A stretch of 64,000 nucleotides of DNA from the IMG/VR virus record IMGVR_UViG_3300020442_000005, positions 186,001-250,000 of that record; one strand, 5' to 3'. Of this stretch, positions 1,505-59,089 are shown one piece after another. The position numbers and the translations under genes were made by a program. The notes beneath the pieces are model-generated. The model ran no database searches, was not told the DNA's origin, and saw only the letters and a list, made by a program, of their open reading frames with translations. Positions within the stretch are counted from its first letter, which is position 1. Each line of letters starts with the position of its first letter.

Positions 1505-2194
1505 TTGATGAAAACAGTATCTGATGTACGCAATATGTTTGCGCAAAAATACCTCAACAATGAATTTGTTGTCGACAAGTCTGGTTGCAAAATGCTTGAA
1601 GTGCTTGGTGTATCTTTCATTGCTGATGATGAAACCATATTTGGAAAAGTAAACTATGCGTACATTAAGAAAGAACTAGACTGGTATTTAAGTCAATCTC
1701 TCAATGTTTATAACATACCTGATACCCCTACAATCTGGAAGCAAGTTGCGACAGCTGAAGGCCAGATTAATTCCAACTACGGATATCTTATATTTTCTGA
1801 CGTCAATGGCCATCAATACGATTATGCCTTGAAGGCTTTGCTAGCTGATGAAAACACACGTCGTGCTTGCATGATTTACACTCGGCCTTCTATTCAAACT
1901 GAATACAACACGGCTGACATGTCAGATTTTATTTGCACCAATGCGGTAACTTACTTCATAAGAGATAATCGATTGAGCTGTGTTGTGCAGATGCGTTCGA
2001 ATGATATATGGGCTGGATACCGAAACGACTATGCGTGGCAGAAATGGGTATTAGAAAAGCTACATTCAGATCTTTTGAATAAATACGATAATTTAGAAAT
2101 CGGCGATATAATCTGGAACGCTTCTTCTCTACACATGTATGAAAGAAACTTTGGGTTAATAAGAAAATTTAATAAAATCGGTCTTTACAAATAG
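1505..2194 (+). CDS. dCMP hydroxymethylase (T4 gp42-like, thymidylate synthase fold)
   Basis: Collinear with T4 gp42 as recalled: FVVDKSG, KELDWY, INSNYG, MIYTRPS, MSDFICTN (catalytic Cys), MRSNDxxxGYRNDYAWQK (Asp where ThyA has Asn), WNASSLHMY. Confidence 0.85.
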   Translation: MMKTVSDVRNMFAQKYLNNEFVVDKSGCKMLEVLGVSFIADDETIFGKVNYAYIKKELDWYLSQSLNVYNIPDTPTIWKQVATAEGQINSNYGYLIFSDVNGHQYDYALKALLADENTRRACMIYTRPSIQTEYNTADMSDFICTNAVTYFIRDNRLSCVVQMRSNDIWAGYRNDYAWQKWVLEKLHSDLLNKYDNLEIGDIIWNASSLHMYERNFGLIRKFNKIGLYK

Positions 2195-12624: not shown

Positions 12625-12625
12625 T

Positions 12626-14166: not shown

Positions 14167-14417
14167 AAACACTACGAGAAACAATACGAAGAATCATACT
14201 CGAGACGAAGTCACACCGATGTTTGAGCGGCAAATTGGTTGATAAAGACAGTATGGAATGTTATAACGATGTTTGCATGCGTATCGAAGATATGACCTAC
14301 GAGCGTGATTTAAACAACAGAGGTACAGCAAATCGAGCTTATTACAATGGCGTTCTTTCAGATTTGCGCAAAAGAAGACGCCGCCTAGAAAAATTACATG
14401 GGATAAACAAAAGATAA
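14163..14417 (+). CDS. hypothetical protein with leader MKTLRETIRRIILET
   Basis: ATGA overlap with the upstream stop. Confidence 0.65.
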   Translation: MKTLRETIRRIILETKSHRCLSGKLVDKDSMECYNDVCMRIEDMTYERDLNNRGTANRAYYNGVLSDLRKRRRRLEKLHGINKR

Positions 14418-14479
14418 CATATAATTATAATGTAGATCCGCTAGGACATTATTAACTAAAACTAAATAGGAAACAAAAA

Positions 14480-23675: not shown

Positions 23676-23970
23676 CCACATTGCAATCCAAGTTGAGTCT
23701 ATCGAAGATTCTGTAAAATGGTATTGTGATAGATTCGGCGGTGAAATATTATACTCGGACGAAACTTGGGCAATGATAGATATGGGAAACGTAAAATTGG
23801 CATTAACGATTCCATCGCAACACCCGCCACACATTGCAATAAAAATTAAATCGATCGATGATTTTCCCAAAAACAAAAAAATAAAGACCCACCGTGACGG
23901 GTCTTTGTTTGTTTATCAATCTGACGATTGTGGTAATGTTATTGAATATATCTACTATCCAGAATCTTAA
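23668..23970 (+). CDS. VOC/glyoxalase family protein
   Basis: IDHIAIQV..IEDSVKWY..RFG; PHIAI; IEYI. Confidence 0.75.
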   Translation: MIDHIAIQVESIEDSVKWYCDRFGGEILYSDETWAMIDMGNVKLALTIPSQHPPHIAIKIKSIDDFPKNKKIKTHRDGSLFVYQSDDCGNVIEYIYYPES

Positions 23971-24572
23971 CCTTCGACTTCTGCAGCTGAGTCAACAACG
24001 CTTTCAGGTACTTGTTCACCCTCTTTGTCTCCACCCGGAAGATACTTGAGAATCATATCGATGCCTGGTACAACACTTAAAACTTCGCTCCAGGATAGAT
24101 TGCAAAGAGAATCAGCAACTTTTTCAGCCATTTCCTCCGCCGGCTCCCCAAAAATAGTTTGCAGCTTTTGCGAAAACTCTCCATCTTTATCTAATCCCAA
24201 CGTTTTTGGAATGTCCTGCACGATCAAACCTATTAGAGTTGAAGAAAACTTCTGTAGGGTTTCTTTGCAGCCACCTTTACCCATTACGATATTGGCAATA
24301 TCTTTGATACCCGATTTCTCAAAGAACTTTGTGATTGCAGTGGCACCGATTCCTTTAGGTTCAATTTTAAGCATGTCAACGACTGCTTTACCAACTGCCT
24401 TTTTAACTCCACCAAAAGCTCCATCAGCCAAATCTGTAAAGAAATCAAATATTCCTTCGTTGAGTGACCGGATTCTTTGAGTTTCTCTGTATTCCAGCAA
24501 GATTGAATGTCTTACGTATGATCTTATTTGAGATTCAATAATAAGATCTCGTCTACTTTGCGTGTAGTACAT
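23967..24572 (-). CDS. hypothetical protein (IRSYVRHSILLE motif)
   Basis: Minus-strand ORF with GAGGAG RBS. Confidence 0.65.
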   Translation of the reverse strand: MYYTQSRRDLIIESQIRSYVRHSILLEYRETQRIRSLNEGIFDFFTDLADGAFGGVKKAVGKAVVDMLKIEPKGIGATAITKFFEKSGIKDIANIVMGKGGCKETLQKFSSTLIGLIVQDIPKTLGLDKDGEFSQKLQTIFGEPAEEMAEKVADSLCNLSWSEVLSVVPGIDMILKYLPGGDKEGEQVPESVVDSAAEVEG

Positions 24573-24628
24573 TGTTTATACTCCTCATTTATACTTGTAT
24601 AATTATATGGCTAATGAGCAAAATGTAA

Positions 24629-25360
24629 TTATTTTTTCTTTGATGACTTCTTCTTCTTGCCACCTTTCTTTTTCTTAACTACAGCCCATGATTTTGATGG
24701 AGTAGCAGAATTAACTCTTGCATGTGCCCATTGGTGTTGTGACATCCCTTTTCGCGAACCGCTGCTCGCCCAAGCTGCAAGTCCTTTTTCGAACTCTCTA
24801 TATACGGAGCTACGGGTTAAACCACGTTTGTCTGCTTTTTTATCGAGTGATTTTTTTGTTTTGGCTGAAAGTTTTTCCAACAAAATTTTGCGAACTAATG
24901 CACGTGCATAAGCCTCGTTCTTTCGTTCCTTCTTTTCCATTTTTTCTCTCCTGTTGTATGCTCTCTGTTCCAGTTCTTTGGCCTTTCCGGTTTTGCCTTG
25001 TTTCCGAAGTTTTTTGGCTTTTTTTAAATCTTCTTGGGTTTTATCTAGTTGTTTGTCCCTTTTTGATCCTTCGGGGGCACCATATTGTTTTAAGTGTCCT
25101 GACGAATCCTTTGCAGCCTCTGTAAGTTCGTCGATTTCTTCAAGCAATTCGTCTAGTGTTTCGTCAACTTCTCGTGGCCCGCCTTCAATAGCAGCGCGCT
25201 GTCCGGATGCGCCTTTTTTTGACGTGTGGCAACCGGCTTTTACATAGCCTTGACTGTCTTTCTTTTTCTTTGTCGGACTTTTAGGTTTATACTTGAGGAC
25301 GTATTTTCCTTTTTTACCATCCGATCTAGTACAATTCTGTTTAACTGTTTTATATGGCAT
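24629..25360 (-). CDS. highly basic modular protein, probable virion protein
   Basis: K-rich; LVRKILLE motif; GLAAWASSG...HQWAHARVNS module. Confidence 0.65.
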   Translation of the reverse strand: MPYKTVKQNCTRSDGKKGKYVLKYKPKSPTKKKKDSQGYVKAGCHTSKKGASGQRAAIEGGPREVDETLDELLEEIDELTEAAKDSSGHLKQYGAPEGSKRDKQLDKTQEDLKKAKKLRKQGKTGKAKELEQRAYNRREKMEKKERKNEAYARALVRKILLEKLSAKTKKSLDKKADKRGLTRSSVYREFEKGLAAWASSGSRKGMSQHQWAHARVNSATPSKSWAVVKKKKGGKKKKSSKKK

Positions 25361-25377
25361 TATTAACTCCTGAGATC

Positions 25378-25776
25378 CTATCGCACGCCGTGCATTGATC
25401 TTAAGGCTTCTATGTTTGGAATCTTTTGTGCTGCATTTGGTCTCACGATAGACAAAAGAACGGCCTCTAATTGAACGCGTTCTTTTTCTTCCGGGTTGAA
25501 CATTCTGAAAGTCGGAGACATAAGTGGAGCGGAAGCTAGGTATTGTGGATCTATGCTTCGTATGAAATCTTGGAGATTTAATCCTTCAAATTCACCATTG
25601 TATCCACTAAAGGCAACCCTTGCCTTTTCGTAGAAATCTGGATATTTACTTTGGATATCAGCCCATTCTTGAAATTTGCCAAACCCGCCCATTGGTCGGT
25701 TGCCTCTTCGGCCGTAGCTAGAATTAAACGTCTCTAAAATAATTCTTCTAATTTGGGTTCTTGTTAATTTCATCAT
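25378..25776 (-). CDS. hypothetical protein with leader MKLTRTQIRRIILET
   Basis: ATGA overlap with the upstream gene. Confidence 0.65.
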   Translation of the reverse strand: MMKLTRTQIRRIILETFNSSYGRRGNRPMGGFGKFQEWADIQSKYPDFYEKARVAFSGYNGEFEGLNLQDFIRSIDPQYLASAPLMSPTFRMFNPEEKERVQLEAVLLSIVRPNAAQKIPNIEALRSMHGVR

Positions 25777-26660
25777 GAACTCCACGTCTCTGGCCGAGGA
25801 CCACCTCTGTAAAATCCTATTCTCATCTGATCAACAACATTGAAGGCTTTAGTGAATCCTTTCACCGCATCTCTCTCGTCTTGAGAATTTTTAATTAGAT
25901 GATCCATCATAGAATACTTTTCAATATCTCTCATTACGCCTTCTCTACTGGGATTTTGTCCAGCAAAACCCATGCCAGGAACTCGATTGGTCTCGGCAAC
26001 TCTTCGGAAGAACGTATAGTATCCAACTTTGTAGGCTTGGCTTCTGTTGTATCGATCCATCGTTTTAAATCTAGGAGATCCAAACATGTCATCGTAATCA
26101 AGAATATCCTGCCATGCAATGTCGAGAGCAATTGAAAGCTCTGTTGGTCGACCATTATTGTGATATGCCGACATCAGATCTGGCTGGTAGTGTTTTTGTC
26201 GAGCCTCACCTATTATGCCTTCTTCGATTATTCGCTCACCCCGAGGCATATCCTCATCGAATCCTTGTGGACCAGGGTCTGTTTTACGGTATTCGTCAAC
26301 AAGATATTCGTATGCGCCTTCTTCGAATTCTCTTTCATAGGGCGCAAAAGCATATTCATCTACGGGATGGTCATCACCATAAAACTTCATGAAGTTGTAC
26401 CCCATTATGTACGCAAACTCATAACCATCCGAATCTGCATTTAAATGTCCACCCTTGTTAAGCCAATCCATTATCTGGCCTATTAAACCTGCATGATCGA
26501 TTTTATAAGCATCTGCCAGACTAATGGCTTGCAGATGATCACTTTTTCTGCCGGTGTAGTATTGATACAATTTCTTAAGTTGATGATCTGGTATGACGTA
26601 CAGCTGTTGCTCAATTGATTCTCTAATGATCTGCCTAAGTTGTCTTTTTGTGATTTTCAT
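25773..26660 (-). CDS. hypothetical protein with leader MKITKRQLRQIIRES
   Basis: Start reassigned to the ATG 2 nt after the upstream stop. Confidence 0.7.
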   Translation of the reverse strand: MKITKRQLRQIIRESIEQQLYVIPDHQLKKLYQYYTGRKSDHLQAISLADAYKIDHAGLIGQIMDWLNKGGHLNADSDGYEFAYIMGYNFMKFYGDDHPVDEYAFAPYEREFEEGAYEYLVDEYRKTDPGPQGFDEDMPRGERIIEEGIIGEARQKHYQPDLMSAYHNNGRPTELSIALDIAWQDILDYDDMFGSPRFKTMDRYNRSQAYKVGYYTFFRRVAETNRVPGMGFAGQNPSREGVMRDIEKYSMMDHLIKNSQDERDAVKGFTKAFNVVDQMRIGFYRGGPRPETWSS

Positions 26661-26661
26661 A

Positions 26662-27099
26662 TTACCATAAATCCTTGCAAGCCCAGTGTCTAGCTGAAAG
26701 TTTATTATTCTTAGTTGATTGTAAATCACACTTGTGTCTGGCTCTGAAGCTTTTTCGTCTTTTGGGATCTTTGTGCTGACTAAAATGCTGCATACCTCGA
26801 TGTCCGTAATGGATGATTTTTTCTTTCCCATCTTGACATGCTTTTACGGTTTTCTTTTTCTTACTTCCGGCAGCAGCCCTACGCGGTTTATTACATTTCA
26901 TTTTGTCTTTATCAAGTTTCTTCTTTTTTGCTTCGTCGACATCAGCTTCCCGAAGATCTGTCTCGTTTTTTGGAACGCAGTTTGGCACAAGTCGGTTTCC
27001 TTTTTTCTTCATTCCAACTTGCTTGTGGCTCTTCCAACAGGCTTCAAGAATTACTGTTCTGATTGCTCTTCGCAGCTTCATTTCATTTCTATAATTCAT
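26662..27099 (-). CDS. basic Cys/His-containing modular protein
   Basis: LRRAIRTVILE, CWKSHKQVGMKKKGNRLVPNCVP, RKSFRARHKC..WACKDLW. Confidence 0.7.
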   Translation of the reverse strand: MNYRNEMKLRRAIRTVILEACWKSHKQVGMKKKGNRLVPNCVPKNETDLREADVDEAKKKKLDKDKMKCNKPRRAAAGSKKKKTVKACQDGKEKIIHYGHRGMQHFSQHKDPKRRKSFRARHKCDLQSTKNNKLSARHWACKDLW

Positions 27100-27202: not shown

Positions 27203-28141
27203 ATGTCCGGTTCAATTAATCTTGGTTACGCATGTATCAACATGTATTTGTCAGAAACAGAAAAAAATACACCAGCTCGAACGTGTCGCAAAGCAACGTT
27301 TCTGGAAAAAGGTTTGCCTCATGTCGGTATGTTGTTCGAACAAAACATTTGCAATCTCATTGCGATTCTCAAGTGGAATTACCGCAATGGTTTCACTTTG
27401 TACCGTATGTCATCAGATATGGCTCCATGGTGTTCAGAATACAACCTAGAAGACCTTCCAAACTGGGAAACATGTAAAGACTTACTCGCCAAAGCCGGCG
27501 CGTACGCTCGCGAAACTGGACAACGTTTGTCATTCCATCCCGGGGCATTTACCGTTCTAGCAGGTAAAAATCCAGCAACACTAAAGAAATCACTCCATGA
27601 GCTTGAAATCCATGGCAAAATTATGGATACGATGGGATTACCACGTTCCCGATATGCAAAAATCAACATTCATCTTGGTGGTGCATATGGCGACAAAGAC
27701 GCAGCAATTGCTCGGTTTATTGAGAACTACAAAAAGCTATCACCAGCGGTTACTACACGTCTGACGCTAGAAAACGATGATCGACCCAATCTGTATACAA
27801 CGCGTGATCTTGTTGAAAAAGTTTTTCCACACACAGGCATCCCAGTCGTGTTTGACTATCATCATCACTTATGCCATCCTGGTGACGACACAGCCGAGCA
27901 GGCTCTTGATCTTGCAGTTTCTACGTGGGGCGACGTGAAACCAGTTACCCATTATTCTGAGACTGCGCAAAAGGACAAGCCCAAAGCTGTCTTCCGTGCG
28001 CACAGCATCATGGTCGAAGGCTATATCAATACGTACGGCCATGACATCGATTGTGTAATCGAAGCTAAAGGTAAAGAGCGCGCTGTGCAAGGTTATCTAG
28101 CTCTATACGGCAAGGAAAACACGTGTCCTGAGGTTGCGTAA
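27203..28141 (+). CDS. uvsE: UV damage endonuclease (UvdE/UvsE)
   Basis: LGYACIN, YRMSSD, RLSFHPG, INIHLGG, LENDD, VFDYHHH, HYSE, IEAKGKE. Confidence 0.92.
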   Translation: MSGSINLGYACINMYLSETEKNTPARTCRKATFLEKGLPHVGMLFEQNICNLIAILKWNYRNGFTLYRMSSDMAPWCSEYNLEDLPNWETCKDLLAKAGAYARETGQRLSFHPGAFTVLAGKNPATLKKSLHELEIHGKIMDTMGLPRSRYAKINIHLGGAYGDKDAAIARFIENYKKLSPAVTTRLTLENDDRPNLYTTRDLVEKVFPHTGIPVVFDYHHHLCHPGDDTAEQALDLAVSTWGDVKPVTHYSETAQKDKPKAVFRAHSIMVEGYINTYGHDIDCVIEAKGKERAVQGYLALYGKENTCPEVA

Positions 28142-31703: not shown

Positions 31704-32015
31704 ATGGAGATTATTTTGAGCCAACATTTATATATCATTCAATCAGATAAAACGGGATCCTTAAAAATTGGAAGAAGCAAAGATCCAGAAAAAAGATTAA
31801 AACAGCTTCAGACGGGATCCCCATATTCTTTGCGTTTAATATTGATTATCGAGAATAGCGGCCACATGGAAAAACAGCTGCACAATCACCTGAAGCGATA
31901 TAAAGAAAGACGTCGTGGTGAATGGTTTGATTTTGAATGTGCAGGATCATTGCCCGACTGGATATGTGAAATGATAAACTGGGATGAAGCAAATGTCTGG
32001 TGGAACAAAAATTAA
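31704..32015 (+). CDS. T5orf172/MUG113 GIY-YIG-like protein
   Basis: LYII....LKIGRS.DPEKRLKQLQTGSP...EKQLH...RGEWF. Confidence 0.85.
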   Translation: MEIILSQHLYIIQSDKTGSLKIGRSKDPEKRLKQLQTGSPYSLRLILIIENSGHMEKQLHNHLKRYKERRRGEWFDFECAGSLPDWICEMINWDEANVWWNKN

Positions 32016-32379
32016 TTATTATATGATCTTTGGTGTTAAGCCTGATGCAGATCAATCTGAGATAAAGAGTCGCTATAAAAAACTGGCAATGCAGTTCCAC
32101 CCAGACATGGCCACTGGTGACGAAGAGTATTTTAAACTAGTAACCCAAGCCTACTCAATCCTCAGCGATCCGTATAAACGTGCGGTATACAACATAGATC
32201 TATTTTCTGGTTCACTTTCTCATATTGAAAACACCAAATCTTTATGCCCAGTGTGCAACGGGAATGGATCTTATGTTTCGAAAGTTAAATATGGAAGGTA
32301 CAAAGTGGATTCAAAAATAGTTTGTACAACATGCAGAGGGACTGGTATTATAGTAAGTGAAAATCCTATTGGAGAATAA
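31984..32379 (+). CDS. mini DnaJ-like protein (J domain plus two CxxCxGxG)
   Basis: YKKLAMQFHPD, AYSILSD, CPVCNGNG, CTTCRGTG. Confidence 0.85.
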   Translation: MKQMSGGTKINYYMIFGVKPDADQSEIKSRYKKLAMQFHPDMATGDEEYFKLVTQAYSILSDPYKRAVYNIDLFSGSLSHIENTKSLCPVCNGNGSYVSKVKYGRYKVDSKIVCTTCRGTGIIVSENPIGE

Positions 32380-32517
32380 ATGTATTATGTTAGGAGCGTC
32401 GTTAGATTTATAAGTCAACGGCTATGTAAACCAAAAACAATAAACAAAGAATTAGATCCGGAGTACTGTGATGCCTGTGAATGCACGCCCTGTGATTGCG
32501 GATTTGGGAGTTATTAA
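32380..32517 (+). CDS. 45-aa Cys-rich peptide (not in ORF track)
   Basis: GGAG RBS; ends YCDACECTPCDCGFGSY; TAATG-coupled to metK. Confidence 0.6.
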   Translation: MYYVRSVVRFISQRLCKPKTINKELDPEYCDACECTPCDCGFGSY

Positions 32518-33500
32518 TGTCATTTAAAAATTATAGAACAGCAGAATGCGTCACACCAAAACATCCGGACAAAATTTGTGATACGATTTCTGACGCAATC
32601 TTAGACCATTGTCTTAAGTCAGATCCATATTCTCGAGTTGCCATTGAGACTGCTGGCGGCCATGGCCATATTCACATCACTGGTGAGATTACAACAAATG
32701 CCTTTTTGCCGCTTGAAGAAATTGCAACAGAGGTTTATGGAAAGCCAATCAAAGTTACGACCAATGTTGTACAACAAAGCAATGAGATCGCGCAAGGTGT
32801 TGACACAGGTGGAGCCGGAGATCAAGGGATTATGGTAGGCTATGCATGCGATCACAATCCAGAAATGATTCCAAACGAGTTGTTTCTTTCAAGACAGATC
32901 TGCAAAGAAATATTTAAAGCCTTTCCGTTTGATGGTAAAACACAGGTCACTCTAGAAAACAACAAAATCAAGACAGTTGTTGCCAGTTTTCAAAACGCTC
33001 CGAAAACAGAACTGACAAGAATCATCAATGGTTGGCTAAGGTCTTGTAGTTTTCCAGTCGATGATAACGTTACCCTTCACTGTAACCCAGCTGGAGATTG
33101 GAAAGTCGGTGGCTTTGATGCGGATGCCGGACTTACCGGTAGAAAGATCGTGATTGATAACTATGGCCCAGCTATCCCAGTCGGTGGAGGAGCATTCTCT
33201 GGTAAAGATCCAACAAAAGTAGATCGGTCCGCCGCATATATGGCTAGAAAAATTGCTGTAGATCACTTGCAACTTCTTCCAAAAAGAAAAGATGGAAACG
33301 AAATCTACGTTTATCTTGCTTATGCTATTGGCTATGACCAACCTGTACAAGCAACGATGATCGTTAACGGAAAAGAGAAATTAGTAACTGGATACGATTT
33401 AAGTCCGAACGGAATTATTGAGCATCTGGATCTAAGAAAACCAAAGTACTTTGAAACTGCACGTTGGGGCCATATGGGCACTGACCAAACATGGGGATAA
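32517..33500 (+). CDS. metK: S-adenosylmethionine synthetase (compact form)
   Basis: ECVTPKHPDKICDTISD, GAGDQG, DGKTQVT, DAGLTGRK, GGGAFSGKDPTKVDRS. Confidence 0.95.
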   Translation: MSFKNYRTAECVTPKHPDKICDTISDAILDHCLKSDPYSRVAIETAGGHGHIHITGEITTNAFLPLEEIATEVYGKPIKVTTNVVQQSNEIAQGVDTGGAGDQGIMVGYACDHNPEMIPNELFLSRQICKEIFKAFPFDGKTQVTLENNKIKTVVASFQNAPKTELTRIINGWLRSCSFPVDDNVTLHCNPAGDWKVGGFDADAGLTGRKIVIDNYGPAIPVGGGAFSGKDPTKVDRSAAYMARKIAVDHLQLLPKRKDGNEIYVYLAYAIGYDQPVQATMIVNGKEKLVTGYDLSPNGIIEHLDLRKPKYFETARWGHMGTDQTWG

Positions 33501-33501
33501 A

Positions 33502-33945
33502 ATGAGTTCTGAATCAACACCAAAACCAAAAAGAAAAAGAAACTGGGCAAAGAACAGAGATATTCTGAAAGCTATACCAAACCCTTCCGGGGATGCGTAT
33601 GAGATTAAAATGAAAATACCTGAGCTTACATTTGAAGGTGTTCGATCTCAGCCGGATTTTGCTAATCTGTATATCACTTTTTACCCGGGCAAAAAAGTTA
33701 TTGAGCTTAAGTCATTGAAAGAATATTTCTTTGCTTTTAGATCACAAATATATTCATATGAAAGAATCATCAATGTTATCTACGATGATATGATGGCTGT
33801 GTATGAACCAACAAGATTGCGACTGGTCATGACTTGTAATCCTCGTGGTGGGATCTCGTCTAAATTAACTGTAGATTCAGACTGGGGAGTTCGTGGTGGC
33901 AATGACCAGTTTATGGATTGGGTAGGGCAAAAAGAAGAATGGTAA
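33502..33945 (+). CDS. QueF-like T-fold protein lacking the catalytic Cys
   Basis: IPNP, PELT, QPDFA, ELKSLK, YE, PRGGIS; TFEGV replaces TSLCP. Confidence 0.8.
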
Positions 33946-36900
33946 GTTTTGATAAAAATCAGATCTATATTATTGATGGTGCAATGGGCACCGAAATACA
34001 GAAAAGACAGGTTGAATCCAAATTCTTTAAATACGAAGGAATCGACTGCGATGGCTTTAATGATATTTTGGTGCTCACCAAACCCGGCCTGATAAAAGAT
34101 ATACACGGTGATTACATCAACTCCGGCGCAAATATCATTGAGACAAATACCTTTAACGCTAATTATATTTCAGCGTTAGATTACGGACTTAGTGATGGAG
34201 CGATCGATAAAATAAACTTTAGCGCTGCCAAAATTGCAAAACAGGCTGCAAAAAAATCTAAAGAAGAGGTGTATGTAGCCGGTGTTTTAGGCCCGACTTC
34301 AAAAACTTTAAGCATGTCACCAAACGTTACAGATCCTTCTTATAGAGATATCACGTACCATGAATTACTCAATGCTTATAAAGCCGCAACTGAAAATCTA
34401 ATTCGTGGTGGCGCAGATTTGATTTTAATCGAAACAGTCTTTGACACACTTAATGCCAAGGCTGCGATTGAGGCTGTGAGACTGGTAGGAGAAGATATTC
34501 CTATCATGATATCAGGTACAATCGTTGACATGTCTGGTCGGACTTTATCTGGCCAGACTGTCGAGGCTTTTTGGAATTCCATTAAACACGCAAGGCCTAT
34601 TAGTGTTGGTTTGAATTGTGCGCTAGGTGCAAAGCAAATGGATCCATTTCTGCGGCGTCTAGCAGACGTCAGTGGTTGCGCAATCAGCGCACATCCGAAC
34701 GCGGGGTTACCAAACGAATTAGGTGAATACGACCAATCCCCGTCTGATATGGCAAACTATATTAAGAACTGGGCAAAAGCCGGGATTGTAAATATAATAG
34801 GTGGATGTTGTGGGTCGACTCCGGATCACATCAAAAAGATAGCCAACACCGTAAAAAAGTTTAAACCCAAAAGGCACATAACCAGAAGTTTTAATTTGGA
34901 CCGGTCAATGATTCTTTCTGGTTTAGAGGTCTTTGATAGCAAAGGAAAGAACTTTATTAATATTGGCGAGCGAACAAACGTCACTGGGTCTTCAAGGTTT
35001 AAAAAATGTATCGTAGAAAAAAGATATGATGATGCGTTGAATATTGCTCGTTCGCAGATTCTAAATGGCGCCCAGATTATCGATATCAATATGGACGATG
35101 GACTCTTAGATTCTAAGAGTGAAATGATTAATTTTTTAAAAATGTTGGCATGCGAGCCTGATATTGCAAAAGTACCAATCATGCTTGATTCTTCGAAGTG
35201 GGATATCCTATCGGAAGCCATGAGATGGATACAAGGGAAAGGTATTGTAAATTCAATTTCTCTTAAAGATGGAGAATCAGACTTTCTTGCCCGGGCAAAA
35301 GAAATTGTTTCGTGCGGACACGCTTTTGTGGTAATGGCTTTTGATGAAAAAGGGCAGGCTGATACTTTTGATAGAAAAATAGAGATATGTGAACGCGCTT
35401 ATTGGATTTTAGTTAACGCAGGAATAAAGCCACAAGACATTATTTTTGATCCAAATATCTTTGCAATCGCCACCGGGATAGAAGAACACGACAACTATGC
35501 AGTCGACTTTATAACTGCTACTGCATGGATTAAAAAGAACCTGCCTGGATGCTACGTCTCCGGAGGATTATCAAACCTATCATTCTCTTTCAGGGGAAAT
35601 CCTCGCGTGAGAGAGATGATGCATTCCGTCTTTTTGTTTCATGCTATCAAAGCCGGGTTGGACATGGCGATTGTAAACGCAGGTCAACTAATGGTGTACG
35701 ACCAGATCGATCAAGGCCATCGGGACATTGTTGAATCTGTTATTTTAAATAAGCATGAAGAAGCATCGGCACAGCTTTTAGAATTAGCAAAATCTCTATC
35801 TGGTAAAACCCGAGTAGAATCTAACGGGTTCCAAGAATGGCGTAACGAAGAGGTTGAAGAAAGAATATCTTTTGCCCTTATAAACGGTATCGATAAATTT
35901 ATCGTCGAAGATGTCAAGGAATGTTACAACAAAATAGGCTCGGCATTAAACGTTGTTGAAGGACCGTTGATGGATGGTATGAACGTAGTTGGAGACCTTT
36001 TTGGCTCCGGTAAAATGTTTTTACCTCAAGTAGTCAAGTCAGCGCGTGTAATGAAAAAAGCAGTCTCGTGGCTCGAGCCTTTTATGGTTGGCACAGATGA
36101 AGCAATACAGAGGGAAAAAATACTGCTTGCCACAGTTAAAGGCGACGTTCATGACATTGGAAAAAACATTGTTAGTATAGTTCTTCAATGTAATGGATAC
36201 GAGATAGTTGATCTAGGAGTCATGGTTCCATTAGAAAAGATACTAGAGGAAGCTGATAAACACCAGGTTGCAGCAATCGGTCTTAGCGGATTGATTACAC
36301 CAAGTTTAGATGAGATGGTTAAAGTTGCTCGAGCAATGAATGAAAGACAAATGGATATACCTTTACTAATTGGTGGAGCAACAACATCAAAAGTTCACAC
36401 GGCAATCAAAATATCTCCGGAGTACTCAAAAACAGTATATATACAAAATGCATCGATTGCAGTCGGAATTGTTAATGACGTGTTAAGTAAGAGTGATGCA
36501 TTCGATAAGATTAATAGGGATTATGAAGAAACTAGGGAGAGAAGAAACTCGAGAAAGCAAACGTTTGTAAGTGTTTCTGATGCAAGAAGAAATGCATATC
36601 AGCTAAAAGGAAAGCCACAGATTCCAGATAACTTTGGAATGACTATCAAAAGCAAAGCTTCAGTTTCAGAGATCATACCATATATTGATTGGGCACCGTT
36701 TGCAATGACTTGGGGAATGAAACCAAAAGATCTTACAAGCCAAGTCGGTAAAGATCTAATGAAGGATGCCCGAGAAATGCTTCGAAAACTTGATGATAAG
36801 ATTGTAGTTAACTATTCATTTGCTATCGATAAATGTACAAAAACAAATAATGACGATGTACTGGTGAAAAGACCGGATAAATCAACGACTTTTAATTTCA

Positions 36901-37454
36901 TGAGGCAAGCAACAAAAAAATCTCGGCCGAATCTTTGTTTGACAGATTTCTTACATCAGGAAGATTGGATAGGGTCTTTTGCGGTCTGGGTGTGCGGAAT
37001 CGATAAGAGAGCAGACATGCTCAGATTAGCCAACGATGATTACGGATCGATCATGATGCAAGCGCTTGGGGATAGACTCGCCGAAGCAACGGCTGAATGG
37101 CTACACGAGAGGGTTCGTAAGTCATGGTGGGGTTACTCAAAAGACGAAAACTTGACAAATACCGACCTTATAAAAGAGCGTTACTTAGGAATCAGGCCAG
37201 CACCCGGATATCCAGCCTGTCCGGATCATACCCAGAAGATAAAAATATTAAACTGGTTAGAAATTAGTGATACAATAGAGCTGACCGAGGGTTTAACAAT
37301 GTCGCCAAAGTCCGCAATATGTGGTTGGTACTTTGCAAGTGCAGAATCAAAATACTTCGGTGTTGGAAAAATACCAGACGAATACGTAGAAGATTTAAAA
37401 GAAAGAAATCCATATCTAAAAAAATACAAAAATCATATAACGGGAGTTAGTTAA
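33939..37454 (+). CDS. metH: cobalamin-dependent methionine synthase, full four-module form
   Basis: [51 protein letters not shown]. Confidence 0.96.
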
Positions 37455-37455
37455 C

Positions 37456-38784
37456 ATGGATAAATTTACAGATTACAAAGTCGCAGATACAAATCTATGG
37501 CGTTGGGGAAAAGACGAGGTAGAATTAGCAGAACATGAAATGCCAGGCCTCATGGCACTGCGTGAAAAGTATGCAGCAGACAAACCACTTCAAGGAGCTA
37601 GAATTGCCGGGTGTTTGCATATGACAATCCAGACCGCTGTTTTAATCGACACTCTTGTCGAGCTTGGCGCAGATGTACGTTGGATGACGTGTAATATCTA
37701 TTCGACACAAGATCACGCCGCGGCATACATTGCAGAGCAGCAAATCCCAGTGTTTGCTTGGAAGGGAATGACCGAGGATGACTATGAGGAATGTTTAGAA
37801 AAAGTCTTATGGTTCGATGAAGGCGTAGGTCCAAACATGATTCTAGATGACGGTGGTGACCTCACAGGATATATCCTGAAGAACCATCCGGATCTTTATA
37901 AGGATATTAAGGGTATCTCCGAAGAGACAACTACTGGTGTTTTAAGATTGGTAGAGTATCAAAACGATGGGGTCCTGCCGGTACCTTGCTTTAACGTTAA
38001 CGATTCTGTTACTAAATCAAAGTTTGACAACAAGTACGGATGTCGTGAGTCGTGTGTTGATGCGATTCGAAGAGCGACAGACATCATGATGGCGGGAAAA
38101 GTTGCGACTGTGGCTGGCTATGGCGACGTAGGTAAAGGTTCTGCTGCTAGTCTGTCCGCGGCTGGCTGTCGTGTTATTGTCACTGAGATCGATCCAATCT
38201 GTGCATTGCAAGCCGTAATGGACGGATTCCAGGTTTTACCTATGGACGAAGCGGTTAAGCAATCCGACATTGTAGTTACAGCAACCGGTAATTGCGACGT
38301 GGTTAGATCAGAACATTTTTCCAATATGAAAGACAACGTTATCGTTTGTAACATTGGACATTTTGATAACGAGATCGATGTAGCATGGTTAAACGAGAAC
38401 TTCGAATCCAAAAACGTAAAACCACAGGTCGACGTATATTATCTTCCGTCCGGACTGACTGATAATAAACCAAATCCTCCGTACAAGAAGATCGTTCTGT
38501 TAGCACAGGGAAGACTAGTGAATCTAGGTTGCGCCACCGGGCATCCAAGCTTTGTTATGTCCTGTTCTTTTGCAAATCAGGTACTTGCACAGATCGAGTT
38601 ATTTTTGAACTCTGATAATTATGAAAATAAAGTTTATGTGCTCCCAAAGATTCTTGACGAAGAGGTTGCCAGATTGCATCTCGATCACGTTGGCGCCAAA
38701 CTCGATAAACTTTCAAACGTTCAGTCGAAATACATTGGCGTGAAACAAACCGGTCCATTTAAGTCTGACGAATATCGTTACTAG
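37456..38784 (+). CDS. ahcY: S-adenosylhomocysteine hydrolase
   Basis: [62 protein letters not shown] end. Confidence 0.96.
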
Positions 38785-38806
38785 ATTTAAAACACTGCGC
38801 CAATGG

Positions 38807-38833
38807 AAAGGAGGGTTAATCCCTCCTTTCTTA
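38807..38833 (+). terminator. intrinsic terminator after ahcY
   Basis: aaaggaggg-ttaat-ccctccttt then T-rich. Confidence 0.75.
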
Positions 38834-41097: not shown

Positions 41098-41147
41098 GGT
41101 ACCGGTGTCAAAACACCAAACAGTTCTTTTAAATCGCAGTAAACTTT

Positions 41148-41231
41148 GCTCGGGTGGCGGAATCGGTAGACGCACCAGACTTAAAATCTGTTGTCCGTAT
41201 GGGCGTGAGGGTTCAAGTCCCTCTTCGAGCA
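41148..41231 (+). tRNA. tRNA-Leu (UAA)
   Basis: Cloverleaf; anticodon loop cttaaaa; long variable arm; T arm gaggg-ttcaagt-ccctc; CCA not encoded. Confidence 0.93.
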
Positions 41232-41391
41232 TTACAATAGGGAATACCTGAGGGGAAGGTATTTTAAATGAGATTGACCTGAAGCTAGATATTACGCTGG
41301 GATCCACAACGAACTTTTATATGATCGACCGCTATAATCTAGAACATCCGCCCTTTCATTTCTTTAAACAATAATTAATTAGGTTATACAA

Positions 41392-41781
41392 ATGGAATTA
41401 ACAAATGGCCAGATTGAGATAGGTATAGTGTTTTTCTATGGCTTTGTAGCAGGATTAGTTGTCAGTATTCTGTATGCTCATGAGCGTTGGAAAAACTTCA
41501 ACTACGACGAGGAACGACGGTTACAATATCAAAAAGAAACGGATGAAAGAAGAAGGATACGCCTTGAGAAATATAAAGAGATGAGAAATCCTGAATCTCA
41601 GTTACGAGTGATACATAAGCAGGAAGAATATATAAGAGAATTACTCTTAGAGCAAGCTAGACTGCACAAACAACTCAATGCATTCGCTGGATGGCCTGAA
41701 TATGAACACTTCCACGAAGATCTTATGAAAAAAATCGACAAACGATTTGAATCTTTACGAATTGAACATGATAACATTTGA
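41392..41781 (+). CDS. N-terminally anchored membrane protein
   Basis: TM segment IGIVFFYGFVAGLVVSILYA followed by coiled coil. Confidence 0.6.
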   Translation: MELTNGQIEIGIVFFYGFVAGLVVSILYAHERWKNFNYDEERRLQYQKETDERRRIRLEKYKEMRNPESQLRVIHKQEEYIRELLLEQARLHKQLNAFAGWPEYEHFHEDLMKKIDKRFESLRIEHDNI

Positions 41782-41828
41782 ACAACTACAGGACTATCTG
41801 TATAATAACTAGGTAAACAAAACTTCAT

Positions 41829-41902
41829 GCATCCATAGCTCAGCTGGATAGAGCATCCGCCTTCTAAGCGGACGGTCGCAGGTTCGAATCCTGCTGGATG
41901 TA
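41829..41902 (+). tRNA. tRNA-Arg (UCU)
   Basis: Cloverleaf; tccgc-cttctaa-gcgga. Confidence 0.95.
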
Positions 41903-41906
41903 CTTT

Positions 41907-41978
41907 TGGTCTGTAGTGTAATAGGTAACACACCAGTTTTTGGCACTGGCGTTCTAGGTTCAAGTCCTGGCAGACCAG
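41907..41978 (+). tRNA. tRNA-Gln (UUG)
   Basis: tggtctg/cagacca acceptor; ccagt-ttttggc-actgg. Confidence 0.92.
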
Positions 41979-42017
41979 CTTTTATACAACTTTAAACAAT
42001 AGGGTATTATTATTTAT

Positions 42018-42120
42018 GGGTCTAGTTAACCTCGAGGGTTCGAACCCCTCTATGACCAAGCAGGCAGGGAGCAATGACTAGATGTCGCCAACAGAAAGAT
42101 ATTCACCAGTATCTCCTTTT
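42018..42120 (+). ncRNA. candidate structured RNA containing an isolated T arm
   Basis: gaggg-ttcgaac-ccctc inside an outer stem tctagtta/tgactaga; promoter-like sequence upstream and terminator-like hairpin plus T run downstream. Confidence 0.45.
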
Positions 42121-42189
42121 GGTTGATAAGCCTTGGGATAGGAAAGTGGTGAGTCCTATCCCAAAGTTCCATCCTTAACTTCATCACAC

Positions 42190-42262
<73 letters not shown>

Positions 42263-42265
42263 TAG

Positions 42266-42338
42266 GCGGGAATAGCTCAGTTGGTAGAGCACCACGTTGC
42301 CAACGTGGAAGTCGCGAGTTCAAGTCTCGTTTCCCGCT
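42266..42338 (+). tRNA. tRNA-Gly (GCC)
   Basis: Cloverleaf; ccacg-ttgccaa-cgtgg. Confidence 0.95.
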
Positions 42339-42343
42339 CTTTT

Positions 42344-42416
42344 GGACACTTAGCTCAGCGGTCAGAGCATCCGACTCATAATCGGCAGGTCCAGGGTTCA
42401 ATCCCCTGAGTGTCCA
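42344..42416 (+). tRNA. tRNA with CAU anticodon (Met or lysidine-modified Ile2)
   Basis: Cloverleaf; loop ctcataa; G1-C72 paired, so not an initiator. Confidence 0.9.
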
Positions 42417-42421
42417 CTTTC

Positions 42422-42562: not shown

Positions 42563-43420
42563 ATGATCGGACATACACCATTCATCTGTATTGACAATGA
42601 TGAAAGAATATGGGCAAAACTAGAAACACACAATAAAACCGGATCTGTAAAAGATCGAATGATTGATTACATATGCGATAATGCTCTTGCAAATGGTGCA
42701 ATCATTCCTGGAAAGACCCGGCTCATTGAGGCAACCAGTGGAAATACTGGAATTGCTTTAGCCAGTTATGCAGCCTCAGTGGGATGCAAATGCCAAATCA
42801 TAATGCCATGTAACATGTCGGAAGAAAGAAAACAAATGATGCATGCGTTCGGCGCCGAAATTATAGAAACCGGCCCAAACGAATTTGGACGTGCAATTGC
42901 GATGAGAGACTTGAAACTGCGGAAGTCTAACCCCGGAGAATATTTCTCGCCTCTTCAATTTAGTAATCCTTTAAATGTGGAATGTCACAGAACAACCACA
43001 GCGCCAGAGATTCACCAGAACATAACAGACATTAAGTGTCTCGCTTGGGATGCATTCGTGCATGGCTCTGGAACTGGAGGGACTATGATGGGATTGAAGA
43101 GTTACATTGATGAGAATAGGTTAGGAGTGAAATGCGTCTTAACTCAGCCGGAAGAAGATAACGCATCCCATGGAATACAGGGCATTAACGATGGTGCTGA
43201 TTTTCTATTAGATAAGTCATTGATGGATGAGTTTATATACGTGAAGACGTCCTCAGCAATTGAACGAATGAAGAGATTCTGGAAAGAAAATGGTATCCTG
43301 ATCGGCATCAGTTCCGGGGCAAACATTCTGGCTGCAGAAGAATACGTGAGAAAGCATGATCCAGCTGGAATCGTCGTCACTATTTTATGTGATCGTGGAG
43401 AAAGATATTTAAAATGTTGA
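42563..43420 (+). CDS. cysK: cysteine synthase (PLP-dependent, CysK/CysM family)
   Basis: KLE..NKTGSVKDR, EATSGNTG, GSGTGGT, HGIQGI, GISSGAN, DRGERYL. Confidence 0.88.
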   Translation: MIGHTPFICIDNDERIWAKLETHNKTGSVKDRMIDYICDNALANGAIIPGKTRLIEATSGNTGIALASYAASVGCKCQIIMPCNMSEERKQMMHAFGAEIIETGPNEFGRAIAMRDLKLRKSNPGEYFSPLQFSNPLNVECHRTTTAPEIHQNITDIKCLAWDAFVHGSGTGGTMMGLKSYIDENRLGVKCVLTQPEEDNASHGIQGINDGADFLLDKSLMDEFIYVKTSSAIERMKRFWKENGILIGISSGANILAAEEYVRKHDPAGIVVTILCDRGERYLKC

Positions 43421-58153: not shown

Positions 58154-59089
58154 TTAGCGACCTGCGAGTTCTTTCCAGTTTTCGTTGTTGCTCCATGGAC
58201 CTTCAACAAATGGCAATCCTGGGAAACGTCGTGTATAGTTTGGACTTTGTTTCTTACGAAGCTTCCATAACGCGTTTCGGCTATTCTCGGCTCCCACAAC
58301 AGGTGCTAGCATATTTGAAACAAGTGTCGTATCATAATATGCAGACAGCTTATCAAAGAAGTCCTTAGGAATCACTGTGCCAATCAAGTGTTTATAATCT
58401 TTCTGAGAGGCAAAAGTTCCATAAACCTCTTCGATCTCAAAACCCAAATCTTCCATCAAAGCGCCTAGTGCTTCATATGTCATTTCATTGGGATGGTTAT
58501 CAGCCGCACCAGTCTTCTCATCGTAGCAAGGAGTAGAAACCCAGAAAACAGATTCGTCGTGCATCAGGTCCTGGCCTCGTCGAAGAAACTCGTTCGCTTG
58601 CCATGGTTGTACGTGCTCAATAACTTCTAAGCAAACAATGGTATCAAATGTTTTGTTCTCACCAAACTCATGAGTCAAAAAATCTGCACGTGCATGAAGC
58701 TGTACGTTTTTAAGTGAGTTTGATTTACCAGACAGAACAGTGTTTTCCAATCGTTCTGTCCCTCTTGTCTTAAACTTATCAGCAGCTTCCAGACCAACGT
58801 ATTCCGAACATTTTACTCGGTTACAGTGCATTGAATTAAGAAGCTGAAGTTCTGGTCCACATCCAATGTCTAGAACGGATGGTCCATTACCTTCATTTAG
58901 TTTACGAGTCTTTGTAGAAAGAAGATGTTTTCCTACGACGTGTGAATAACGAGCGGCATGTGCGATATAGTCGCGGTGTAATTGAACGCGTTGCATTGCG
59001 GTCTCCACTGATAGATGTGTACGATTAAACTCTTCGCGATATCGCTTGAGTTCCTCTTTGTTGATTTGTTTAGTTTCAATAACTGACAT
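58154..59089 (-). CDS. class I SAM-dependent methyltransferase
   Basis: VLDIGCG, DTIVCLEVIEHV, STP; AAGGAG RBS and own promoter. Confidence 0.85.
   Translation of the reverse strand: MSVIETKQINKEELKRYREEFNRTHLSVETAMQRVQLHRDYIAHAARYSHVVGKHLLSTKTRKLNEGNGPSVLDIGCGPELQLLNSMHCNRVKCSEYVGLEAADKFKTRGTERLENTVLSGKSNSLKNVQLHARADFLTHEFGENKTFDTIVCLEVIEHVQPWQANEFLRRGQDLMHDESVFWVSTPCYDEKTGAADNHPNEMTYEALGALMEDLGFEIEEVYGTFASQKDYKHLIGTVIPKDFFDKLSAYYDTTLVSNMLAPVVGAENSRNALWKLRKKQSPNYTRRFPGLPFVEGPWSNNENWKELAGR

What the first reader, a model, noticed from the sequence alone, without database searches (positions are those of the whole stretch)
32517..38784. Complete SAM/methionine cycle (metK, metH, ahcY) as one tightly coupled operon in a phage-like genome
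Seen: metK, a QueF-like gene, full-length B12-dependent metH and ahcY overlap or lie 1 nt apart and end in a terminator; the flanking genes are phage-type. Established: MetK makes SAM, AhcY removes SAH (the product inhibitor of methyltransferases), and MetH remethylates homocysteine while converting 5-methyl-THF to THF. Inference: the virus carries a closed loop that sustains methylation potential and returns folate to the pool used by its dCMP hydroxymethylase (1505). Together with MBD4-like repair (40027), an orphan methyltransferase (58154) and cysK (42563), this looks like a one-carbon/sulfur support system for a heavily modified genome. To my knowledge a full four-module MetH together with AhcY is very unusual in a virus.
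Basis: partly seen in the sequence, partly recalled or inferred. Interest (0 to 1): 0.85.

Follow-up and report, generated by a model that had tools for sequence, protein, structure and literature searches.

The report
Phage-borne SAM and methionine recycling operon
An uncultured 273-kb marine phage carries one tightly packed operon for making SAM, clearing its by-product SAH and remaking methionine with a full B12-dependent methionine synthase; the operon also holds an uncharacterised QueF-like gene that sits beside methionine synthase in bacteria as well.

Summary
Window 32517-38784 carries metK (327 aa), a QueF-like gene (147 aa), a five-module cobalamin-dependent metH (1171 aa) and ahcY (442 aa). 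The genes are 1 nt apart or overlap by 7 nt, and a strong terminator follows. Catalytic motifs are intact, and composition matches the rest of the window.

The window belongs to a 273-kb IMG/VR contig, and the operon was recovered identically in several assemblies. Related marine contigs keep the same module, sometimes reordered. Synonymous sites are saturated while protein sequences are conserved. Their MetH proteins form one clade apart from cellular MetH. No genuine GenBank phage has a full MetH, and among the 10 MetH-bearing IMG/VR loci found only this contig carries this clade.

So this is a long-kept phage metabolic module, not contamination. The "closed loop" is incomplete: no metF and no clear methyl sink were found. 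The viral call rests on indirect evidence, because no capsid or terminase gene was reachable.

The QueF-like protein is not a preQ0 reductase, since its catalytic Cys is Gly. It belongs to a large Cys-less family. In Bacteroidota that gene lies between the two halves of a split metH. In phages it lies beside metH, ahcY or metK. That linkage is the most novel lead.

The parts
32380..32516 (+). 137-nt leader between dnaJ-like gene and metK; no riboswitch
   Evidence: No Rfam match at gathering score for the whole window, or at E<=1 for 32200-32700. The fold is no more stable than shuffles, z = 0.29. A GGGAG Shine-Dalgarno-like motif lies before the ATG.
32517..33500 (+). metK, compact S-adenosylmethionine synthetase (327 aa)
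   Evidence: Three Pfam MAT domains. TIGR01034 scores 255 bits, below the equivalog cut-off of 309. The HPDK, GAGDQG and GGGAFSGKD..DRSAAY motifs are kept and the loops are shortened relative to solved MATs. It belongs to a 315-344 aa family seen only in metagenomes.
33502..33945 (+). Cys-less QueF paralogue (147 aa), T-fold, NADPH motif kept
   Evidence: Pfam QueF at E 2.5e-21. The catalytic Cys55 column of B. subtilis QueF holds Gly46, while Asp62, Glu78, Glu97 and the ELKSLKEY motif are kept. The AF2 model has pLDDT 88.8 and best matches bsQueF at rmsd 1.3-1.4 A. The family forms a clade separate from canonical QueF with support 100.
33939..37454 (+). metH, full-length cobalamin-dependent methionine synthase (1171 aa)
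   Evidence: Five Pfam modules. NF007024 and TIGR02082 score above their cut-offs. The Zn cysteines (GLNCALG, GGCCG), the DVHDIG cobalamin motif and the [12 protein letters not shown] AdoMet motif are present and are conserved in 17/17 clade members.
37456..38784 (+). ahcY, S-adenosyl-L-homocysteine hydrolase (442 aa)
   Evidence: TIGR00936 scores 602 bits against a cut-off of 498. It aligns end to end with solved SAH hydrolases at E 1.7e-189. The nearest Atlas clusters are mostly Bacteroidota.
38805..38831 (+). intrinsic terminator closing the operon
   Evidence: An 11-pair stem with 6 GC pairs, a 5-nt loop and a T-rich tail.
1505..2194 (+). dCMP hydroxymethylase (T4 gp42-like), a consumer of methylene-THF; outside the operon
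   Evidence: phmmer gives E 3.9e-70 to 1B49/1B5E deoxycytidylate hydroxymethylase, against about 1e-8 to ThyA. The RNDYAW Asp is kept. Neighbouring genes encode dUTPase and dCMP deaminase.
42563..43420 (+). cysK/cysM-like PLP enzyme, syntenic with the operon in a related contig
   Evidence: Pfam PALP. TIGR01136 scores 249 bits, below its cut-off of 344. The same position is occupied in the P0124 contig.
58154..59089 (-). class I SAM-dependent methyltransferase, the only candidate SAM user seen in the window
   Evidence: Pfam Methyltransf_23. Only weak UbiG/Hen1 similarity. No DNA methyltransferase family matched.

Best explanation
The operon is a phage-encoded activated methyl cycle module. 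It is expressed as one translationally coupled unit during infection of a marine bacterium, possibly a member of the Bacteroidota.

The proposed cycle is as follows. MetK converts methionine and ATP to SAM. SAM-dependent methyltransferases, phage or host and not identified here, produce SAH. AhcY hydrolyses SAH to adenosine and homocysteine, which removes the product inhibitor of methyltransferases. MetH remethylates homocysteine with 5-methyl-THF, regenerating methionine and releasing THF.

The net effect is a higher and unregulated flux through SAM regeneration, since no SAM, SAH or B12 riboswitch is present. It also drains the 5-methyl-THF pool back to THF, which the phage's dCMP hydroxymethylase needs as methylene-THF.

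The Cys-less QueF-like protein is a fourth, conserved partner of MetH. It is most likely an NADPH-dependent enzyme acting on a pterin/folate-type or guanine-type ligand that serves methionine synthase, and it is not a preQ0 reductase.

Shown: gene identities, intact catalytic motifs, operon structure, conservation and purifying selection across a phage lineage, and the linkage of the QueF-like gene to metH in phages and bacteria. Inferred: expression, activity, the methyl sink, the folate benefit, the host, and the chemistry of the QueF-like protein.
For: - Identities and motifs.
- Coupled junctions and terminator.
- No riboswitch.
- Same GC, GC3, codon use and tetranucleotide signature as the rest of the window.
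- The identical operon occurs in several assemblies (IMG/VR, two ENA assemblies, Logan).
- The module is conserved in diverged relatives. The order metK-QueFL-metH-ahcY is kept in the P0124 contig and in L173. L085 has ahcY-metK-QueFL-metH. L172 has QueFL-metH alone.
- pN is 0.10-0.24 against pS 0.73-0.86 for all four genes.
- Motifs are kept in 17/17 MetH and about 118/120 short MetK sequences.
- The 18 phage-type MetH sequences form one clade with SH-aLRT 100, separate from gammaproteobacterial and Bacteroidota MetH.
- A dCMP hydroxymethylase is present in the same genome.
- The QueF-like gene lies between the halves of a split metH in 15 of 45 bacterial loci. It lies next to metY/hom or a Pterin_bind gene in others.
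- The QueF-like gene is adjacent to metK, ahcY or metH in 16 of 80 viral loci retrieved with the QueF-like query alone.
Against: - No capsid, portal or terminase gene was found in the roughly 83 kb of this genome that could be read. The viral nature therefore rests on indirect evidence.
- No DNA methyltransferase or other clear SAM sink was found in the window.
- No metF was found, so the methyl supply depends on the host.
- MetH needs cobalamin and a reductive reactivation partner, and neither is encoded nearby.
- MetK scores below the NCBIfam equivalog cut-off and has shortened loops.
- In 64 of 80 viral loci the QueF-like gene has no methyl-cycle neighbour.
- In two bacterial operons the QueF-like gene coexists with metF. 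This weakens the idea that it replaces MetF.
Confidence: 0.7

Rival explanations
1. The main pay-off is on the folate and methionine side, not methylation potential. MetH releases THF from the 5-methyl-THF trap to feed hydroxymethyl-dCMP and purine synthesis, and it supplies methionine for phage proteins. MetK and AhcY merely keep homocysteine cycling.
For: A T4-type dCMP hydroxymethylase, dUTPase and dCMP deaminase lie in the same genome. A cysK-like gene is syntenic with the operon. No DNA methyltransferase was seen in the window. One lineage, L172, keeps only QueFL-metH.
Against: Many more viral contigs carry ahcY, often with metK and the QueF-like gene, without metH. This points to SAH removal and SAM supply as the commoner selected function. 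Homocysteine can only cycle if methyltransferases consume SAM.
Confidence: 0.3
2. The contig is not a phage. It could be a bacterial fragment, a plasmid-like element or a chimeric assembly, in which case the operon is ordinary cellular metabolism.
For: No hallmark structural gene was found in the accessible DNA. DnaE, GroEL, DnaJ, a sigma factor, SOD and the methyl-cycle genes are all cell-like.
Against: - It is an IMG/VR contig of 273 kb.
- Every contig carrying these genes is under 1 Mb.
- Only about 28 of about 113 called genes have any Pfam hit. The tool description gives 73 in 100 as usual for complete genes.
- Genes run almost all on one strand and overlap.
- It has a six-tRNA cluster.
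- It has a T4 gp42-like hydroxymethylase and a T5orf172/GIY-type gene.
- Atlas neighbours of a 944-aa ORFan are all Uroviricota.
- Composition is uniform across the operon borders.
- The identical sequence occurs in several assemblies.
- The MetH and short MetK clades contain no named cellular organism.
Confidence: 0.08
3. The QueF-like gene is a genuine preQ0 reductase that makes preQ1 for a 7-deazaguanine DNA modification, and its place in the operon is coincidental.
For: Pfam QueF matches, and TIGR03139 scores 93.7 bits, just above its cut-off of 86.9. The fold and the NADPH motif are QueF-like. Phages with QueF do make dPreQ1 (bioRxiv 10.1101/2023.04.13.536721).
Against: - Gly replaces the catalytic Cys in the window protein and in nearly all relatives.
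- C55A and C55S abolish bsQueF activity (PMC13740343).
- No queC, queD, queE, tgt or queA homologue lies within 10 kb in 90 viral loci or anywhere in the window. Phages that make dPreQ1 carry the whole set.
- The family forms a clade separated from canonical QueF by a long branch.
Confidence: 0.04

Closest known systems
Viral auxiliary metabolic genes of organosulfur / methionine metabolism (Kieft et al. 2021, bioRxiv 10.1101/2021.01.05.425418)
   Same: That catalogue lists metK, ahcY, metH, dcm, mtnN, luxS and cysK among AMG families found on viral contigs. The genes here are of those families.
   Different: There they are listed as separate families. Here three of them, plus a fourth conserved gene, form one translationally coupled operon kept across a jumbo-phage lineage. 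The full-length MetH clade is seen in IMG/VR only on this contig. No paper found describes such a module.
Bacterial activated methyl cycle operons (ahcY with metF and/or metH under an SAH riboswitch in Proteobacteria; own knowledge)
   Same: The enzymes and the logic are the same: SAH hydrolase is co-transcribed with the homocysteine remethylation step.
   Different: There is no SAH, SAM or cobalamin riboswitch and no metF. MetK is included. A Cys-less QueF paralogue sits where a folate-side gene would be expected.
Split metH operon of Bacteroidota (found here in Cyclobacteriaceae, Crocinitomicaceae, Flavobacteriales and other genomes)
   Same: The same Cys-less QueF-like gene, at 60-69% identity, is packed against metH.
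   Different: In these bacteria the gene lies between a separate homocysteine-binding gene and the rest of metH. In the phage MetH is one fused 1171-aa protein. Phage MetH is not nested in the Bacteroidota clade.
[quoted passage not shown]
   Same: It shares the T-fold, the E-L-K-S-h-K-x-Y NADPH motif, and the equivalents of Asp62, Glu78 and Glu97.
   Different: The catalytic Cys55 is Gly. Phe95-His96 are replaced by an invariant Ser-Tyr. There are no queuosine-pathway neighbours.
Phage SAM-directed functions (T3 SAM lyase; streptococcal prophage MetK genes)
   Same: Phages are known to manipulate SAM pools, and metK is annotated in Streptococcus prophages.
   Different: Those phages either destroy SAM or carry a lone metK. 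This one carries the regeneration loop with ahcY and metH.

Membership tests
Cobalamin-dependent methionine synthase MetH | Five-module architecture (Hcy-binding, pterin-binding, B12 cap, B12-binding, activation) and a score above the curated equivalog cut-offs | tested here: met
   All five Pfam domains are present. NF007024 scores 1601 bits against a cut-off of 1497, and TIGR02082 scores 1406 against 1011.
Cobalamin-dependent methionine synthase MetH | Zn-binding Cys triad, DxHxxG cobalamin ligand motif, and RxxxGY AdoMet motif of the activation domain | tested here: met
   GLNCALG, GGCCG, DVHDIG and [12 protein letters not shown] are seen in alignments to solved MetH. They are kept in 17/17 clade members.
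Cobalamin-dependent methionine synthase MetH | Catalytic activity with cobalamin and a reactivation partner | not testable with these tools
   This needs an enzyme assay or complementation of an E. coli metE metH mutant.
S-adenosylmethionine synthetase MetK | Three MAT domains and the conserved ATP/methionine/metal motifs | tested here: met
   Pfam N, M and C domains are present. HPDK, GAGDQG and GGGAFSGKDPTKVDRSAAY are present.
S-adenosylmethionine synthetase MetK | Score above the NCBIfam equivalog cut-off (TIGR01034) | tested here: not met
   It scores 255 bits against a cut-off of 309. The protein is 327 aa with shortened loops and belongs to a divergent 315-344 aa family seen only in metagenomes.
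S-adenosyl-L-homocysteine hydrolase AhcY | AdoHcyase catalytic and NAD-binding domains and a score above the equivalog cut-off | tested here: met
   TIGR00936 scores 602 bits against 498. It aligns over its full length to solved enzymes at E 1.7e-189.
QueF preQ0 reductase | T-fold and QueF NADPH-binding motif E(S/L)K(S/A)hK(L/Y)(Y/F/W) | tested here: met
   The ELKSLKEY motif is present. The AF2 model matches bsQueF at rmsd 1.3-1.4 A.
QueF preQ0 reductase | Catalytic cysteine that forms the thioimide with preQ0 (Cys55 in B. subtilis) | tested here: not met
   Gly46 aligns with the Cys55 column, which holds Ala in the C55A entry 4FGC. It is Gly in all 28 aligned family members and in nearly all of the close relatives. 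C55A and C55S are inactive (PMC13740343).
QueF preQ0 reductase | Genomic company of the 7-deazaguanine pathway (queC/D/E, folE, tgt/dpdA), as in phages that make dPreQ1 | tested here: not met
   None of 90 viral loci, nor the window, has a queC/D/E, tgt or queA homologue within 10 kb. folE and dpdA were not searched directly; the precomputed Pfam lists for the annotated contexts name no GTP cyclohydrolase I or TGT domain.
Virus-encoded auxiliary metabolic gene cluster | The host contig is a virus (capsid, portal, terminase or equivalent hallmarks) | tested here: inconclusive
   No hallmark was found in about 83 kb. Indirect evidence is strong: IMG/VR membership, about 25% Pfam coverage, a tRNA cluster, a T4-like gp42 gene and Uroviricota-only Atlas neighbours.
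Virus-encoded auxiliary metabolic gene cluster | The genes are native to the viral genome (flanked by viral genes, host-like composition absent, conserved in related viruses) | tested here: met
Riboswitch-controlled methionine/SAM operon | SAM, SAH or cobalamin riboswitch in the leader | tested here: not met
   No Rfam match at gathering score or at E<=1. The leader is not structured.
dCMP hydroxymethylase (T4 gp42) | Closer to gp42 than to ThyA, with the catalytic Cys and the cytosine-specifying Asp179 present | tested here: met
   E is 3.9e-70 to 1B49/1B5E against about 1e-8 to ThyA. The FICTN and RNDYAW motifs are kept.

The most novel reading that the evidence does not exclude
The Cys-less QueF paralogue is an unrecognised working partner of methionine synthase and the activated methyl cycle. 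It is shared by Bacteroidota, Kangiellaceae and other bacteria and by many marine phages. It may be an NADPH-dependent T-fold reductase acting on a folate or pterin, that is, a non-homologous route to or around 5-methyl-THF, or another service to MetH. The phage operon would then be a four-enzyme unit, and thousands of 'QueF' annotations in marine viromes and Bacteroidota genomes would be wrong.
Probability: 0.35. Interest if true: 0.8.

Novelty: new variant of a known kind. Interest (0 to 1): 0.62.

Why it matters
Phage metabolic genes are usually single steps. Here a lineage of large marine phages keeps a whole regeneration loop for the cell's main methyl donor, including one of the largest and most cofactor-demanding enzymes of central metabolism, a B12-dependent MetH.

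This implies that SAM turnover, methionine supply or folate recycling limits replication of these phages. It ties phage success to cobalamin availability in the sea. It also gives a concrete system for asking what a hydroxymethyl-C phage does with so much methyl flux.

Separately, the gene-order evidence singles out a widespread, mis-annotated QueF paralogue as a candidate missing player next to methionine synthase in Bacteroidota. That idea can be tested with simple biochemistry and genetics.

Tried and rejected
1. Virion and packaging genes. PHROGs and Pfam scans of 40 larger ORFs of the window and the right flank, plus precomputed Pfam lists, found none. Walking two steps to the right gave only ORFans. 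One look-up on each side failed because the exact product was not on record.
2. Cultured relatives. tblastn of DnaE, the 954-aa ORF and the 822-aa ORF against 50,697 phage records gave only distant DnaE hits, a short (about 55-residue) match in cyanophages, and nothing.
3. MetH in GenBank phages. All full-length hits are mislabelled bacterial records or small fragments. They were rejected as evidence of phage MetH.
4. Riboswitches and a structured leader: none found.
5. Contamination or chimera. Rejected on composition, codon use and independent assemblies.
6. QueF-like as a replacement for MetF. Not rejected, but weakened. A MetF homologue lies in the same operon in two Bacteroidota loci, and no anticorrelation could be tested.
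7. The wide Cys-less alignment (A1) was too diverse for locus scanning, so a narrower one (A2) was used.
8. Literature searches on a QueF/AhcY or QueF/MetH link and on phage methionine synthase found nothing specific. Two marine and aquatic jumbo-phage papers do not mention these genes.
9. dN/dS could not be given as a ratio, because synonymous sites are saturated. The closest available DNA copy, L084, is identical.
Full report
**What is there.** Window 32517-38784 holds four same-strand genes.
- metK (32517-33500, 327 aa) has all three methionine adenosyltransferase domains.
- A QueF-family gene lies at 33502-33945 (147 aa).
- metH (33939-37454, 1171 aa) has all five modules of cobalamin-dependent methionine synthase and scores above both NCBIfam equivalog cut-offs.
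- ahcY (37456-38784, 442 aa) also scores above its cut-off.

The junctions were read from the sequence. There is 1 nt between metK and the QueF-like gene. The QueF-like gene and metH overlap by 7 nt (ATGGTAA). There is 1 nt between metH and ahcY. A strong hairpin terminator follows at 38805-38831.

**Are the enzymes intact?**
- MetH aligns over its whole length with solved methionine synthases. It keeps the zinc cysteines, the DxHxxG cobalamin ligand motif and the AdoMet-binding motif of the activation domain.
- AhcY aligns end to end with solved SAH hydrolases at E 1.7e-189.
- MetK keeps its catalytic motifs but has shortened loops and falls below the TIGR01034 cut-off. It belongs to a large family of 315-344 aa proteins known only from metagenomes, and the motifs are kept in that family.

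**Is it native to this genome, and is the genome a phage?** The window is bases 186,001-250,000 of IMGVR_UViG_3300020442_000005, a 273,025-bp contig. The same operon with its flanks occurs on contigs of 12-196 kb in two ENA assemblies and a Logan assembly, and the Logan copy compared base by base is identical. GC, GC3, codon use and tetranucleotide signature of the operon match the rest of the window. Chimeric assembly or host contamination is therefore very unlikely.

The surrounding DNA looks like a large phage.
- Nearly all genes are on one strand and tightly packed.
- There is a cluster of six tRNA genes.
- Phage-type genes include DnaE, a T4 gp42-like dCMP hydroxymethylase, dUTPase, dCMP deaminase, a GIY/T5orf172 gene, UvdE, GroEL, DnaJ and a sigma factor.
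- Only about a quarter of the roughly 113 called genes have any Pfam hit.
- Atlas neighbours of one large ORFan are all Uroviricota.

However, I found no capsid, portal or terminase gene in the roughly 83 kb I could reach. There is no cultured relative either. I put the chance that this is a phage at about 0.9.

**Conservation.** The module recurs in diverged relatives from other marine samples.
- A 78-kb JGI contig and a 53-kb Tara scaffold have the same neighbourhood: UvdE ... T5orf172, DnaJ, metK, QueF-like, metH, ahcY.
- A 256-kb Tara scaffold has ahcY, metK, QueF-like, metH in a different neighbourhood.
- A 66-kb contig has only the QueF-like-metH pair.

In these relatives the QueF-like stop overlaps the metH start in the same way. 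Between the window and two of these relatives, synonymous sites are saturated (pS 0.73-0.86) while pN is 0.10-0.24 for all four genes. The genes have therefore been kept under purifying selection for a long time.

In a tree, the 18 phage-type MetH sequences form one clade (SH-aLRT 100). It is separate from the gammaproteobacterial and Bacteroidota enzymes at about 50% identity, and no donor is resolved.

**Rarity.** No genuine phage record among 50,697 in GenBank has a full MetH. The hits are mislabelled bacterial assemblies or fragments. A scan of IMG/VR with a clade alignment returned ten loci. Only this contig carries the clade. The others are 5-22 kb contigs at 58% identity or less, some with metF, and none with the QueF-like gene.

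AhcY, by contrast, is common on viral contigs: 89 stretches were confirmed and 80 loci kept. It often sits with the QueF-like gene and/or metK. Kieft et al. list metH, metK and ahcY among viral organosulfur AMG families. I found no description of the combined module.

**How it most likely works.** The operon supplies three of the enzymatic steps of the activated methyl cycle: SAM synthesis, SAH hydrolysis and homocysteine remethylation. The leader carries no SAM, SAH or cobalamin riboswitch. Expression therefore follows the phage programme rather than metabolite feedback.

The likely benefits are sustained methylation capacity, methionine salvage, and release of THF from 5-methyl-THF. The last point fits the presence of a dCMP hydroxymethylase, which consumes methylene-THF.

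The loop is not closed by the phage alone.
- No metF homologue was found.
- The only SAM-dependent enzyme seen in the window is a generic class I methyltransferase.
- Cobalamin, MetH reactivation and adenosine removal must come from the host.

AhcY and the QueF-like protein have their nearest cellular relatives in Bacteroidota. This is a weak hint to the host.

**The QueF-like gene.** This is the least expected part. The protein has the QueF fold: the AF2 model has pLDDT 88.8 and matches B. subtilis QueF at rmsd 1.3-1.4 A. It keeps the NADPH motif and the residues that hold the 2-amino-4-oxo ring of the substrate. But the catalytic cysteine is glycine, and replacing that cysteine abolishes QueF activity (PMC13740343).

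The glycine, together with an invariant Ser-Tyr-Glu-Arg segment, defines a large family. That family is split from canonical QueF by a long, fully supported branch. No queuosine-pathway gene lies near it in 90 viral loci.

Its gene neighbours point to methionine metabolism.
- In 15 of 45 bacterial loci, from several Bacteroidota families, it lies between the two halves of a split metH.
- In Pleionea it lies next to a full-length metH.
- In Chitinophagaceae it lies next to metY-type and homoserine dehydrogenase genes.
- In Neomarinimicrobiota it lies next to a pterin-binding gene.
- In viral loci retrieved with the QueF-like protein alone, 16 of 80 have metK, ahcY or metH adjacent. The rest sit among ordinary phage genes such as DnaE, PhoH and ClpP.

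I propose an NADPH-dependent reaction on a folate, pterin or related ligand that serves MetH. Two bacterial operons also contain metF, so a simple MetF replacement is doubtful. This part is inference.

**Verdict.** The finding is real and is a genuine, conserved phage module. It extends a known kind of system, viral auxiliary metabolism of sulfur amino acids and SAM, to a complete multi-enzyme operon that includes a very rare viral MetH. The QueF-like/MetH linkage deserves follow-up in its own right.

Noticed in passing
window 33502-33945; genome loci L093, L095, L097, L098, L100, L101, L104, L109, L119, L120, L136 around 8,500-13,200: In several Bacteroidota families metH is split into a ~333-aa homocysteine-binding gene and a ~900-aa remainder. 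The Cys-less QueF-like gene lies exactly between them. In L100 and L136 a 122-aa ORF and metF follow.
   Followed up: partly
window 1505-5407: A nucleotide-modification cluster: a T4 gp42-like dCMP hydroxymethylase (1505-2194), DUF6378 (2204-2614), dUTPase (2611-3054), an NAD-dependent sugar epimerase (3055-4044), a DHH phosphoesterase (4123-5004) and dCMP deaminase (about 5027-5407). It suggests hydroxymethyl-C DNA, perhaps sugar-decorated.
   Followed up: partly
window 12271-12624: A pterin-4a-carbinolamine dehydratase (Pfam Pterin_4a) gene in a phage. It is a second pterin-related gene in the same genome as the QueF-like T-fold protein. No aromatic amino acid hydroxylase was seen nearby.
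   Followed up: no
window 8427-9110, 19120-20709, 20827-21528, 31984-32379: Cell-like helper genes: an Fe/Mn superoxide dismutase C-domain protein, a full GroEL, a sigma-70 family factor and a short DnaJ with a zinc-finger region. DnaJ sits directly upstream of the operon in three related contigs.
   Followed up: no
window 41147-42417: A cluster of six tRNA genes (Leu-TAA, Arg-TCT, Gln-TTG, Thr-TGT, Gly-GCC, Met-CAT) about 2.4 kb downstream of the operon.
   Followed up: no
window 5503-7971: An 822-aa ORF with no Pfam, PHROG or GenBank-phage match. It lies in the stretch with the highest GC (0.44) and AT skew (0.29) of the window.
   Followed up: no
window 23967-27099: The only block of minus-strand genes (five ORFs). 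GC and AT skews are reversed there, and a UvdE-type endonuclease gene follows on the plus strand at 27203-28141.
   Followed up: no
L064 (IMGVR_UViG_GVMAG-M-3300021185-6_000001) 10001-15718: A giant-virus MAG contig has ahcY followed within about 600 nt by a full-length metH (48% identity to the window's). In the tree it sits on a long branch near cellular sequences. It could be real or bin contamination.
   Followed up: no
viral loci L175-L252 (for example L231 5899-6318): In 15 of 75 viral loci a DUF2452 protein gene overlaps the end of the Cys-less QueF-like gene. In 11 loci a DnaE gene ends right at its start. The QueF-like gene is thus a very common stand-alone gene of DnaE-type marine phages.
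   Followed up: partly
L173 14891-15979: In a related Tara scaffold an IMP dehydrogenase-family gene directly follows ahcY. Peptide deformylase and an FKBP-type isomerase gene lie nearby.
   Followed up: no
window 62446-64000 and beyond (L089, L264): About twenty co-directional, overlapping ORFs of 120-525 aa have no family match, apart from one PAP2 and one weak RecA-like hit. They may be an unrecognised structural or injection module.
   Followed up: partly
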